A DNA stretch of 63,118 nt, filler included, from Choristocarpus tenellus KU-1152 (GCA_964200185.2; 6 parts of 6 records of this genome joined end to end with filler, not necessarily neighbours in it); one strand, 5' to 3'; numbered from the whole stretch's first letter, positions 60,234 through 63,118 are shown. Translations and numbers: made by a program. The notes: generated by a model not told the origin, from the letters alone.

Positions 60234-60331
60234 GGATAATGTAGGTGCCCCTTTCCTGATTATGGTCCAAATGGACCCCCTGGTGTAGACCCCTTCCCCC
60301 CCCCCCCCCTCCCCCCCCCCCTCCCAGATAT
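60234..60331 (+). mobile_element. MITE family A right half at contig start
   Basis: ggataatgtaggtgcccctttcctg..ggtgtagacccc..cccagata matches copies 22605 and 41881. Confidence 0.75.
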
Positions 60332-60783
60332 GTTTGGTCACAGATGAGGTGTTAGGTAGCAGTTAAGTACTCGCATATTCCATGCCCGATTGGAGAGGGA
60401 TAATTAGTTTGACGGGGGGACAGGCTGGCCTCTGTTGGCAGGTGTGACTCTTTGCTCTGAAGGAGGTGAATCTCAGGCCTTGGAGTATATGTCGGAAGCC
60501 CTTTAGTTAGGAGTGTGCTATTCTACTCTCAGTGGTTTCTCAAAATCGGGGGCATCAGGGGGACCAATATTGAAAGAGATGACTCTTTACTTTTGTCTAT
60601 TATGATAGGGTTGGGGTTGTGGACTGCACTACGCCTCTTGCTTAATTAATTCAAGGCAATTTGATTGCCCTTTCAATGTTGTCTAATTCTCAATTAGGTT
60701 TAGGGTGTCCTAATTTGCTCGTGCTGTTAACCCTTAGCCCCCCACCCCCACCCCCACCCCCACCCCATTTCTCAACCACATAG

Positions 60784-63083
60784 CCGGAGCTACTGACTTT
60801 GGGAGACGACATGCATGTTGGGTTTGCTTCTAGCACCTACTGCAGCATTTACACCTCTCCGAATTCGTTCACGATGTCCAGGACATCTGTGGGGAACAGG
60901 TTGGTGGTGTGATCAAGGTCCATTCTCATCCCTTTTTTTTTCTTAACGATATTAACGACGTGGCAACTGCCCACTGTTTCAAATACATATATATATATAT
61001 ATTGTTTTTTATTATTAAGACTGCAAAGGGAAGTTAATTTTTTTTTTTAAGAAATCCTGTCTCAGGTGTCTGCTGTTCTCTCACCTGGAAGGGGAGTACC
61101 TCGAACCCTCTTTTTGTTATTCTTATTGTTACTGTTACCACGTTAGTCCGAGAGGGGCCTGAAATGAAAACCTACAGTCAAAGACTAATGCGGAGGACGA
61201 GCAACAAATTTCGAATGCAACAAGACAGAAGAATCTTCTTTCTATTAAAAAAAGAAAAGAAATGGGAGACACGAATTGAAAGTCGGAAAACAAGGGCGTT
61301 ACCTGGTCATACACCCCCCCCCCCCCCCNNNNNNNNNNTTTTAAAAAAAAAAAAAAAAAATGGCGCACCCACCACCAAAAATACCACAACAGCGTCCTTC
61401 CCTCTCCCCCCCCCCCCCCCCCCCCCCCCCCCTGCCCCCTTCCCCACTTCATACTGGATACCTATGCGCATTTGTGGTTCTCAGGGGCCTCAACGGTGCT
61501 GGGTCTGTGATGCTTCCGGGGGCAACACTTCCCGCCGGGGCCGCGGTTGGACCCAACACCCGATTGTCACACGATGACCCCGTGCGTGAAGACGCCCTTC
61601 ACCTTGGAACTCCCGAGCCGATGGTGGCAGGCAGGTACGTTTCTCCTGCCCGGGACCTCTCTCATCTCGAGCGGTTCCTCTACATTGCAGCGCCGGTTCC
61701 ACTGTCGCTGCTTTCAGCGTCGGTTACACTTAACGCGGGGTTCTGGCCACTGCTGGGGATGGCATTCATTGCCAAGGAGCTGGAAGACATTCAGGCAGTG
61801 TGGGGGGGGGATAGGGATGGAATGGTAGGAGTTGGGGTGGAAGGATGGCGGTGGGTCCTCGCCGGGGGTGCTAGTTGGCTTGCCCCTCTGGCTTGGTTGG
61901 CCTTTGGGGCTGTGCTGATTGTGACAGGGGCGGCTGTGAAGTGGCTGGTGGTGGGTATGCAGCACTCTTCCATCACTCGGTGAGAGTGGGGTATGCAGCG
62001 TTGGGGATAGGGTGGTGATGAATGAGACTTGCTAGTGGAACGGCTAACATGCTGTAGAGACGTGGAGTGGAACCTGTATGATGTTGAAGTGGTTGATGTA
62101 TACCGAGGGCTGGGTCTTATTAAGTCTGCCAATGTACACCGAAGAGGGTTGGGCGGGGGGGGAGGTTGACTGTTTGTGGTGCGCTTTGGCCTTGGACAAG
62201 GGAACTATTCGTGGGATCTGTGCTTCTGGCGTTTGTCCTCTGGAGTGGTAGATAAGATGGACAGAATATTGTATGTTTGCATAACTTCAGGAAAACTATC
62301 ATGCGTGAGGCAGTGCAGAGCGCCTTCCAAGAACAGTACAAGTAGAATTGAACCTGAAAATGACCAACTCAGATACTACAATGCCGTCTTGATCGAGCAT
62401 TGTACCATTATACTCCCAACAGAGCCTGTGATATTCCCTATCATTTTGCAACTGTGCCTACCATTTTTCACAAAAAAAACAAAACATGCACTTCATTTGA
62501 TGGATGGAATGTCTGGGGCGGGGGGGGCGGTCAGACTTTGGTCTGTCTACCATTACAGGACTCTGCTGGTCCTCCATATCCAGGTGCAGGCCCACTTCTT
62601 GTTTGTAGATTGCCTACGAAGGGGAAGGCTATTTAACTGCTATGCACGGCTCTTGGGTGCCAGCGTTGGACGTGATGCAGATGTTGCTACCCCTTACTTC
62701 ACTGACCATGATCTGGTGAGGCTTCCTCTAGTTTGGTTGTTCTGATTGCATGAAGTCATGCCCCCACCATGCCTTCCCCCTTGCTTCTTTGCAGAAGGGT
62801 GGGGGAGAGCAGTTTTAGTTTGGTGGGGGTGGTGGGGATGGGAGTGGAAGGGGAAGGAGCTTCGATCTCGAGGCTGTAGATGGCCTTGTGTTCTTTGAAG
62901 TGGTGGGGATGAGAGTTGAAGGGTATATTTTGTTCTGGCAGGTTCTTTGGCAGCAAAAAAGCTTGTGTTAGCCCAACTCCCTGCTCACTCTTCCTGACCT
63001 TCTGTTTGATACTCCGTGGCTGGAGTCAGGTGTCCATCGGAGACCGTGCAGTTGTTGAGGAGGATTGCATCCCCCACCCACAG
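60784..63083 (+). CDS. Internal exons of a membrane protein with LbH/hexapeptide repeats, similar to the C-terminal region of Pls/PosA-type NRPS (TIGR02353-like); both ends missing
   Basis: Phase-consistent exons 60784-60899 (PELLTLGDDMHVGFAS..RTSVGNR), 61485-61979 (GAGSVMLPGATLPAGAAVGPNT..HLGTP, two hydrophobic helices, AAVKWLVVG), 62535-62715 (LWSVYHYR..LRRGRLFNCYARLLGASVG..FTDHDL), 63030-63083 (VSIGDRAVVEEDCIPHPQ). Confidence 0.8.
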
Positions 63084-63118
63084 GTAATGGTACAGTTTTT
63101 ATTGTGGCTCACTATACC

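What the first reader, a model, noticed from the sequence alone, without database searches (positions are those of the whole stretch)
60784..63083. Intron-containing eukaryotic gene with the terminal module of a poly-amino-acid synthetase (Pls/PosA-like NRPS)
Seen: four canonical spliced exons encoding LbH segment, two TM helices, KWLVVG, LWSxYxYR, RLLGAxVG and DxDLVxIGD. Known: this alternation of TM helices and RxLGxxIG/ExDLVxIG beta-helix-like domains forms the C-terminus of the bacterial membrane-bound single-module NRPSs that polymerise epsilon-poly-L-lysine or poly-diaminobutyrate. Inference: this alga-like eukaryote carries a domesticated, intronised homologue that may make a cationic homopolyamide or acylate an extracellular polymer. 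No adenylation or carrier domain is visible in the window. Similar terminal domains also occur in some other eukaryotic multidomain proteins, so novelty is unproven.
Basis: partly seen in the sequence, partly recalled or inferred. Interest (0 to 1): 0.8.

Follow-up and report, generated by a model that had tools for sequence, protein, structure and literature searches.

The report
Brown-alga Pls-like membrane acyltransferase fragment
This small contig of the brown alga Choristocarpus tenellus carries four expressed, correctly spliced exons from the membrane-anchored end domain known from bacterial poly-lysine synthetases, but its closest relatives attach that domain to a fatty-acid/polyketide assembly line, so it more likely releases or transfers a hydroxy-fatty acyl chain than builds a poly-amino-acid.

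Summary
Four GT-AG exons on the + strand (60784-60899, 61485-61979, 62535-62715, 63030-63083; 846 nt) are joined exactly at these borders by a 3172-nt, depth-65 spliced contig in a public run. The N gap (61329-61338) lies in intron 1 and the spliced contig skips it. The piece is a whole 2885-bp contig of Choristocarpus tenellus, and NCBI's model of this gene is P0001.

Homology to the Pls/PosA terminal domain is real. P0001 hits TIGR02353 at E 1.9e-17, and exon 3 alone at E 0.0024. The fragment maps to the end of the second beta-helix, the third transmembrane pair (TM5/TM6) and the start of the third beta-helix.

The poly-amino-acid reading is not supported. The nearest full-length relatives are FAAL-ACP-KS-AT-KR-ACP-terminal domain proteins: P0005 (E 1e-68) and a Nannochloropsis salina PKS. 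A genomic relative with the same intron positions shows KR, carrier and terminal domain in one gene. In a tree the fragment falls outside the classic A-T-type Pls/PosA clade.

The upstream part of the Choristocarpus gene itself was not visible. Function is inferred: release or transfer of an ACP-bound (3-hydroxy)acyl chain at a membrane. Interest is moderate.

The parts
60784..60899 (+). Exon 1 (116 nt, ends in phase 2): turns of the second left-handed beta-helix (C2) of the terminal domain. The preceding exon lies off the contig.
   Evidence: AG/GT borders. The spliced contig X3 is laid from 60782 and joined to 61485. tblastn with P0005 residues 2542-2594 gives E 1.5e-10.
60900..61484 (+). 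Intron 1 (585 nt as assembled), containing the N gap 61329-61338 flanked by poly-C (61314-61328), poly-A (61343-61360) and a 27-C run (61406-61432).
   Evidence: The transcript contig skips 585 nt, GT..AG. Homopolymers are listed. DNA contigs stop at 61328 and restart at 61447.
61485..61979 (+). Exon 2 (495 nt): last beta-helix turns of C2 (GTPEP = the family's GSPA motif), linker, TM5, loop, TM6, and KWLVVG...QHSSIT.
   Evidence: X3 record 13 is laid contiguously over 61482-61978. Exon-level relatives P0002-P0004 give E 1e-42 to 2.5e-39. It aligns to bacterial Pls-type proteins.
61663..61779 (+). First long helix of the transmembrane pair (TM5 in Pls numbering).
   Evidence: AlphaFold helix at P0001 residues 90-128. 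Kyte-Doolittle peak at 61675-61731.
61804..61878 (+). 75-nt G-rich in-frame segment (25 aa, GGDRDG...GGASW) in the loop between the two TM helices. It is present in the transcript contig but left out of NCBI's model P0001 and absent from relatives.
   Evidence: No placement of the skip has GT-AG, GC-AG or AT-AC ends.
61882..61953 (+). Second long helix of the pair (TM6), running into the invariant K-W of KWLVVG.
   Evidence: AlphaFold helix at P0001 residues 138-161. Hydrophobic segment 61855-61965. K157 is invariant and W158 nearly invariant in 39 sequences.
61980..62534 (+). Intron 2 (555 nt).
   Evidence: Skipped by the transcript contig, GT..AG.
62535..62715 (+). Exon 3 (181 nt): LWSVYHYR strand, two core alpha-helices, and RLLGASVG...DHDL at the start of the third beta-helix (C3).
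   Evidence: This exon alone hits TIGR02353 at E 0.0024. Exon-level relatives are 79-84% identical. The model shows strand 167-170 and helices 174-209.
62716..63029 (+). Intron 3 (314 nt).
   Evidence: Skipped by the transcript contig, GT..AG.
63030..63083 (+). Exon 4 (54 nt): VSIGDRAVVEEDCIPHPQ, the first turns of C3. The donor GTAATG follows and the next exon lies off the contig.
   Evidence: The transcript contig runs on 27 nt beyond 63083 into sequence that is not on this piece. It aligns to P0005 ...VGEDAVVDEQCTPHPQ.

Best explanation
The piece holds four internal exons of a large Choristocarpus tenellus gene. They encode the last third of a Pls/PosA-type terminal domain: the end of the second left-handed beta-helix, the third transmembrane helix pair, two core helices and the start of the third beta-helix.

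In the bacterial enzymes this domain is predicted (AlphaFold and RoseTTAFold, not solved) to be a pseudo-trimeric beta-helix acyltransferase sitting on six membrane helices. It takes the acyl thioester from the carrier domain just upstream and couples it to a free nucleophile.

In this algal lineage the assembly line that feeds the carrier is most likely not an amino-acid adenylation domain. It is most likely a fatty acyl-AMP ligase plus a type I PKS module (KS-AT-KR). The chain handed over would then be a (3-hydroxy) fatty acyl group. The terminal domain would serve as the thioesterase-free release step, transferring that chain to an amine or hydroxyl acceptor at a membrane.

Shown: the exons, their splicing and expression, homology to the terminal domain, position within it, and the fold. 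Shown only in relatives: carrier, KR and PKS upstream. Inferred: the donor, the acceptor and the chemistry.
For: Splicing and expression. Identity as a C. tenellus contig and NCBI model.

Homology: TIGR02353 at E 1.9e-17 and 62.9 bits, with 451 relatives.

Position: the fragment aligns to 1012-1268 of a 1334-aa A-T-terminal protein and to 2550-2798 of P0005.

Fold: pLDDT 86.7, with beta-helix, two long helices, strand, two helices and beta-helix again. TM-score is 0.61-0.66 to Pls/PosA-family models in the ESM Atlas. This matches the predicted PosA architecture described in PMC10522769.

Upstream architecture in relatives: P0005 is FAAL 59-590, ACP, KS, AT, KR 1710-1892, terminal domain 2122-2840. 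N. salina P0161 is a multi-module PKS plus terminal domain, and Stygiella P0074 is the same kind. A carrier sits directly before the terminal domain in five relatives.

The Logan contig with the same exon borders carries KR exons (Pfam KR positions 1-33, 51-90 and 113-160; E 6e-7, 1.5e-4, 3e-10), then a carrier, then the terminal domain.

Tree: window + Phaeothamnion + P0005 has SH-aLRT 98, adding Nannochloropsis 90, adding the plant FAAL forms 89. The 29 classic A-T types form a separate clade at 98.

The Choristocarpus transcript contig extends 2297 nt upstream of exon 1. If collinear with P0005, that is enough to reach the KR.
Against: The upstream 2.3 kb of the Choristocarpus transcript could not be read, so a PKS module in this very gene is inferred from relatives only.

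The closest named relative (Phaeothamnion P0006, 50% identical) is itself partial and shows only carrier plus terminal domain.

The tree rests on 254 columns, a quick search and several long branches, and it is unrooted.

No member of the FAAL/PKS-loaded clade has a known product, and no terminal domain of this family has a solved structure.

The organism behind the Logan contig is not known.
Confidence: 0.65

Rival explanations
1. One reading: the gene is a single-module NRPS of the classic Pls/PosA type (A-T-terminal domain) that polymerises a diamino acid into a cationic isopeptide homopolymer.
For: The terminal domain is homologous. Most of the 150 best relatives are A-T-terminal proteins of about 1300 aa. 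A fungal epsilon-poly-lysine synthetase shows that eukaryotes can have such enzymes (PMC7179176). Homologues in other eukaryotes are mentioned in PMC10522769.
Against: All A-T types score far lower than the PKS-loaded ones (at most 122 bits against 248 for P0005). They form a separate starred clade. The relative with identical intron positions has KR exons, not an A domain, before the carrier.
Confidence: 0.1
2. The gene is a shorter FAAL-ACP-terminal domain protein without a PKS module, like those of Marchantia (MpACOS18), Cryptomeria and some fungi. It would transfer an unextended fatty acyl chain.
For: Such proteins exist, and the two plant ones are the sister group of the algal PKS clade in the tree (SH-aLRT 89). 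Phaeothamnion P0006 shows only carrier plus terminal domain in its partial model.
Against: The three nearest informative relatives (P0005, Nannochloropsis, the Logan contig) all have a KR before the carrier.
Confidence: 0.17
3. The piece is a decaying remnant, a free-standing small TM/beta-helix protein, or bacterial contamination, and has no role in a megasynthase.
For: Only a fragment is visible. The contig is tiny and low-complexity tracts abound. No Pfam family is hit, either exon by exon or with the stored model.
Against: There are three GT-AG introns. The spliced contig has depth 65, against about 5 for the intronic contigs in the same run, and runs on 2.3 kb upstream. There is no stop in 282 codons. 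Exon 3 is 79-84% identical to relatives. Intron positions are shared with a relative.
Confidence: 0.03

Closest known systems
Pls (epsilon-poly-L-lysine synthetase, Streptomyces) and PosA (delta-poly-L-ornithine synthetase, Acinetobacter baumannii); NCBIfam TIGR02353 terminal domain
   Same: Transmembrane helix pairs alternate with left-handed beta-helix segments. The motifs GSPA, KW..G, LWS, RLLGA.G and D.DLV.IGD are shared. The predicted fold is the same. In relatives a carrier domain sits directly upstream.
   Different: Only 22-31% identical. The score is below the family cut-off even in full-length relatives (164-201 against 423 bits). The fragment sits outside the starred clade of A-T-type proteins. 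In the nearest relatives the loading part is FAAL + PKS instead of an amino-acid A domain. The linker after the beta-helix is shorter, and there is a 25-aa loop insert. The gene is nuclear and has introns.
Nannochloropsis PKS with terminal domain: N. salina NSK_004922 (TFJ83820.1, 6656 aa) and the N. gaditana fragments EWM29724.1 / EWM29704.1. These fit the 'PKS-Clade II' architecture of Balzano et al. 2019 (PMC6872974)
   Same: FAAL-ACP-KS-AT-KR plus transmembrane helices. The terminal domain groups with the window's fragment (SH-aLRT 90). The paper proposes that such enzymes make 3-hydroxy fatty acids.
   Different: About 28% identical in the shared part. The N. salina protein has several modules. 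I could not show that the paper's Clade II genes are the same genes. The paper's main text holds no occurrence of 'non-ribosomal' and draws transmembrane helices without naming a terminal domain. No biochemistry exists.
Phaeothamnion confervicola CAM9806510.1 (partial, 946 aa) and the metagenomic protein P0005 (2855 aa)
   Same: These are the nearest relatives: 50% and 38-43% identical over the whole fragment, forming a clade at SH-aLRT 98.
   Different: Both are unnamed and unstudied. P0005 is an intronless ORF on a contig whose neighbours (annexin, O-FucT and Nramp genes) suggest a eukaryote.
Acyl-ACP-dependent beta-helix acyltransferases LpxA/LpxD (comparison from general knowledge, not tested here)
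   Same: They are trimeric left-handed beta-helix enzymes that move a 3-hydroxyacyl chain from a carrier protein to a hydroxyl or amine. That is the chemistry proposed here.
   Different: They are soluble true trimers with a free-standing ACP. No sequence match was found here beyond weak generic beta-helix hits.

Membership tests
Pls/PosA family NRPS (TIGR02353) | Score at or above the curated cut-off (423.1 bits) of the terminal-domain model | tested here: not met
   P0001 (a fragment) scores 62.9 bits. The full-length relative P0005 scores 164.3, and the Nannochloropsis-cluster protein P0013 scores 200.9. Bacterial A-T types score 630-635.
Pls/PosA family NRPS (TIGR02353) | Three pairs of TM helices alternating with three beta-helix segments | tested here: inconclusive
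   The window shows one pair with beta-helix on both sides, exactly as at the C2/TM5-6/C3 position. The other two pairs lie off the contig, though they are present in relatives.
Pls/PosA family NRPS (TIGR02353) | An amino-acid adenylation domain and thiolation domain directly upstream in the same protein | not testable with these tools
   The contig ends 550 nt before exon 1, and the sequence of the transcript contig is not available. In the nearest relatives the carrier is present, but the loading part is FAAL + KS-AT-KR.
Pls/PosA family NRPS (TIGR02353) | The product is an isopeptide homopoly(amino acid) | not testable with these tools
   This needs chemistry.
Type I PKS with terminal domain (FAAL-ACP-KS-AT-KR-ACP-terminal) | KS, AT and KR encoded upstream in the same gene | not testable with these tools
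   Not visible for Choristocarpus. It is met in P0005, P0161 and P0074. KR is met in the Logan contig that shares the exon borders.
Type I PKS with terminal domain (FAAL-ACP-KS-AT-KR-ACP-terminal) | The terminal domain groups with those of PKS-loaded proteins rather than A-T-loaded ones | tested here: met
   Tree of 44 rows and 254 columns: a clade with P0006 and P0005 at 98, adding Nannochloropsis at 90. The A-T types form a separate clade at 98. Bit scores are 248 against at most 122.
Left-handed beta-helix (hexapeptide) acyltransferase superfamily | Beta-helix fold and hexapeptide repeats | tested here: inconclusive
   The model shows regular short strands at residues 19-68 and 213-246. Foldseek's best hits are gamma-carbonic-anhydrase-like/YrdA and hexapeptide transferases, but at E 0.06-0.6. 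The Pfam Hexapep model is not hit by the fragment.

The most novel reading that the evidence does not exclude
FAAL/PKS-carrier-terminal domain enzymes are found in brown and related algae, eustigmatophytes, a jakobid, liverworts and conifers. They may be membrane polymerases or transferases that couple 3-hydroxy or other hydroxy fatty acyl units to each other or to a wall component. In that case they would build ester-linked aliphatic surface polymers (algaenan-, cutin- or sporopollenin-like) by the same template-free mechanism that Pls uses for poly-lysine.
Probability: 0.12. Interest if true: 0.85.

Novelty: new variant of a known kind. Interest (0 to 1): 0.5.

Why it matters
The Pls/PosA terminal domain is the only known catalyst that builds a polymer from carrier-bound monomers without a template or a condensation domain. 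So far it has been studied only with amino-acid loading.

An expressed brown-alga copy groups with proteins in which the same domain closes a fatty-acid/polyketide line with no thioesterase. This points to an unstudied way of releasing or polymerising polyketide-type chains at a membrane, spread across several eukaryotic lineages.

It also gives a concrete candidate for the missing release step of the Nannochloropsis 'PKS-Clade II' enzymes proposed to start long-chain hydroxy fatty acid and diol synthesis.

The window itself adds only a fragment. The value is as a pointer, not as a complete system.

Tried and rejected
- **Family scans of single exons:** Pfam gave nothing, and NCBIfam gave only exon 3 at E 0.0024. 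Pfam also gave nothing for P0001.
- **Word-based protein searches:** They found no long Choristocarpus protein and no further full-length PKS-terminal proteins.
- **First upstream look-up:** it failed because my reference dropped a residue. It was repeated correctly.
- **Solved structures:** there is none for the terminal domain, only A-domain entries and generic beta-helix proteins.
- **Rfam:** nothing on the piece.
- **Literature:** I found no paper describing a PKS fused to this terminal domain. 'NRPS_term_dom' occurs in one preprint, on a dinoflagellate gene. No supplement of Balzano 2019 is held as text.
- **Cluster look-ups of the small exon-level relatives:** no organism names.
- **Rejected, bacterial contamination:** the gene has introns and spliced RNA.
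- **Rejected, hidden exon in the N gap:** the transcript and the alignment are continuous across it.
- **Rejected, NCBI's 75-nt internal skip as an intron:** its ends are non-canonical in every placement and the segment is retained in the transcript contig.
- **Joined peptide:** I did not build or search one from my own exon model, which would include the 25-aa insert. All joined-level searches used the stored NCBI protein P0001 by its id.

Full report
**What is in the piece**

Only 60234-63118 is real sequence. A protein search with exon 2 returned an NCBI entry, 'unnamed protein product, partial [Choristocarpus tenellus]' (P0001, 248 aa), recorded on a contig of 2885 bases, which is exactly the length of this piece. 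Piecewise comparison shows that P0001 is encoded here. C. tenellus is a brown alga.

On the + strand there are four exons, each bordered by AG and GT:
- E1 60784-60899
- E2 61485-61979
- E3 62535-62715
- E4 63030-63083

Together they make 846 nt in one frame. The split codons are AGG at E1/E2 and CGA at E2/E3. The only correction is that E2 ends at 61979 (...QHSSIT, donor GTGAGA), not at KWLVVG.

**Splicing, expression and the gap**

I laid the contigs of three public runs of the same organism on the piece.
- Two runs (X1, X2) cover the introns, so they hold the unspliced genomic form.
- The third (X3) has one 3172-nt contig at depth 65 that joins 60899|61485, 61979|62535 and 62715|63030, each skip ending GT..AG. 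Its intronic contigs have depth of about 5.
- The library type of X3 is not on record, but this pattern is that of RNA.
- That contig runs on 2297 nt upstream of E1 and 27 nt downstream of E4, into sequence that is not on this piece. The four exons are therefore internal exons of a much longer transcript.

The N gap (61329-61338) lies in intron 1 between a poly-C run and a poly-A run. DNA contigs stop at 61328 and restart at 61447, so its true length is unknown. The transcript skips it, and the E1/E2 join aligns without a gap to the nearest relatives. The gap does not touch the reading frame and hides no exon.

NCBI's model leaves out 75 nt inside E2 (61804-61878, a G-rich 25-aa stretch). No placement of that skip has canonical intron ends, and the transcript contig keeps the stretch. 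I therefore read it as a loop insertion that the annotation removed.

**What it encodes**

Taken exon by exon, only E3 reaches a family model: TIGR02353, the Pls/PosA terminal domain, at E 0.0024. Pfam finds nothing. For joined-level searches I used the stored NCBI protein P0001 by its id.
- P0001 hits TIGR02353 at E 1.9e-17 and 62.9 bits.
- Against 1.84 billion representatives, P0001 finds 451 proteins at E<=1e-3.
- Added to an alignment of whole terminal domains, it falls at 1012-1268 of a typical 1334-aa bacterial A-T-terminal protein and at 2550-2798 of P0005. That is the end of the second beta-helix, the third TM pair and the start of the third beta-helix.

An AlphaFold model built with 39 aligned sequences is confident (pLDDT 86.7, pTM 0.84). 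It shows beta-helix turns, two long helices, a strand, two shorter helices, then beta-helix again. This matches the layout predicted for PosA in PMC10522769.

The ESM Atlas returns Pls/PosA-family models at TM 0.61-0.66 over nearly the whole fragment. The PDB holds no structure of this domain, only weak generic beta-helix matches.

**What the rest of the gene probably looks like**

The best full-length relative is P0005 (E 1e-68; 2855 aa). It is an intronless ORF on a 27-kb metagenome contig whose neighbours (annexin, O-FucT and Nramp genes) suggest a eukaryote. Its domain order is:
- fatty acyl-AMP ligase, 59-590
- ACP
- KS
- AT
- KR, 1710-1892
- a weak second carrier
- terminal domain, 2122-2840

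Other relatives agree.
- Nannochloropsis salina NSK_004922 (6656 aa) is a multi-module PKS ending in the same domain. A jakobid transcript (4380 aa) is similar.
- The nearest named relative, from Phaeothamnion confervicola (50% identical), is partial and shows carrier plus terminal domain.
- A 22-kb Logan contig (L001/L002) holds exon-level matches with the same exon borders as the window.
- Upstream on that contig, on the same strand and in order, lie three exons that hit Pfam KR at model positions 1-33, 51-90 and 113-160 (E 6e-7, 1.5e-4, 3e-10). They carry the TGGTGGIG and YAAAN motifs.
- After the KR exons come a carrier exon and then the whole terminal domain.

In a tree of the shared region (44 rows, 254 columns, quick search, unrooted):
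- The window groups with Phaeothamnion and P0005 (SH-aLRT 98).
- Nannochloropsis joins next (90).
- FAAL-loaded proteins of Marchantia and Cryptomeria join after that (89).
- The 29 classic A-T-loaded proteins, including a named Streptomyces Pls/PosA protein, form a separate clade (98).

If the Choristocarpus transcript is collinear with P0005, its 2.3 kb upstream of E1 would reach into the KR. I could not read that sequence.

**How it most likely works**

What is established for the family comes from Pls and PosA (PMC10522769, and general knowledge of Pls). The terminal domain takes the thioester-bound monomer from the adjacent carrier and couples it to a free nucleophile, without a condensation domain or a thioesterase.

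For the algal clade the invariant unit is again carrier plus terminal domain. The carrier, however, is fed by FAAL-KS-AT-KR, with no dehydratase, enoyl reductase or thioesterase seen among the domains found. The chain on the last carrier would therefore be a 3-hydroxyacyl group.

I infer that the terminal domain is the release step and transfers this chain to a hydroxyl or amine at a membrane. Whether it does so once or repeatedly is unknown.

Balzano et al. 2019 (PMC6872974) described Nannochloropsis 'PKS-Clade II' enzymes with AMP, PPT, KAS, AT and KAR domains and transmembrane helices. They proposed that these make 3-hydroxy fatty acids on the way to long-chain hydroxy acids and diols. Their main text does not name a terminal domain. 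That architecture fits the relatives found here, but I could not show that they are the same genes.

**Comparison and novelty**

The fragment is a homologue of the Pls/PosA terminal domain, not an equivalog. Even full-length relatives score 164-201 bits against a cut-off of 423, and the fragment lies outside the A-T-type clade.

Terminal domains of this kind are already scattered through eukaryote databases. They occur in fungi, plants, a rotifer cluster, dinoflagellates, a diplonemid and a jakobid. A eukaryotic copy is therefore not new in itself.

The FAAL/PKS-loaded form appears not to have been described, within the papers I could search. The brown-alga copy is shown here to be spliced and expressed. 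I rate it a new variant of a known kind, of moderate interest. The window holds only about a tenth of the likely protein, and the function is inferred.

**Limits**
- The upstream domains of this very gene are not seen.
- The organism of the Logan contig is unknown.
- The tree is short and unrooted.
- There is no biochemical evidence for any member of this clade.

Noticed in passing
window 61804-61878: NCBI's gene model (P0001) removes 75 in-frame nt inside exon 2. No placement of the skip has canonical intron ends, and the spliced transcript contig keeps the segment. Relatives lack the 25-aa G-rich stretch, so it looks like a lineage-specific insertion in the loop between the two TM helices.
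   Followed up: yes
window 60290-60325, 60738-60766, 61314-61360, 61396-61445: Long C-rich homopolymers and (CCCCCA)n / (CCTCCCC)n arrays, plus an 18-A run, sit in the 5' flank and in intron 1. Both the assembly gap and the breaks between the public runs' contigs fall at these tracts.
   Followed up: partly
window 61689, 62646, 62487, 62809-62810: There are single-base differences between the assembly and the public runs. A>T at 61689 (transcript contig) and A>G at 62646 (X2) are both third-codon-position and synonymous. The others lie in introns. These are probably strain or allele differences.
   Followed up: partly
L001/L002 (Logan SRR23272286 contig 7944, 22146 bp): A relative of unknown organism carries the KR-carrier-terminal domain gene spread over about 15 kb or more, in many short exons. 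Its exon borders around the window's four exons are the same as in the window.
   Followed up: partly
P0149/P0194 (Marchantia polymorpha MpACOS18), P0097 (Cryptomeria japonica), P0118 (Hortaea werneckii): Land plants and fungi have FAAL-carrier-terminal domain proteins of 1700-2500 aa. In the tree the two plant ones are sister to the algal PKS-loaded clade. None seems to be characterised.
   Followed up: no
ESM Atlas cluster, row 3: A cluster of about 800-aa Streptophyta proteins annotated 'Catalase / hexapeptide transferase' matches the fragment's fold at TM 0.66. This suggests a catalase fused to the same TM plus beta-helix module.
   Followed up: no
L003 10001-18568: The nearest full-length relative (P0005) is one uninterrupted 8.6-kb ORF on a metagenome contig. 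Its neighbours include genes for annexin/TerD, O-fucosyltransferase-like, Nramp and a CHASE hybrid kinase. The source is probably an intron-poor protist related to the PX-clade algae.
   Followed up: no
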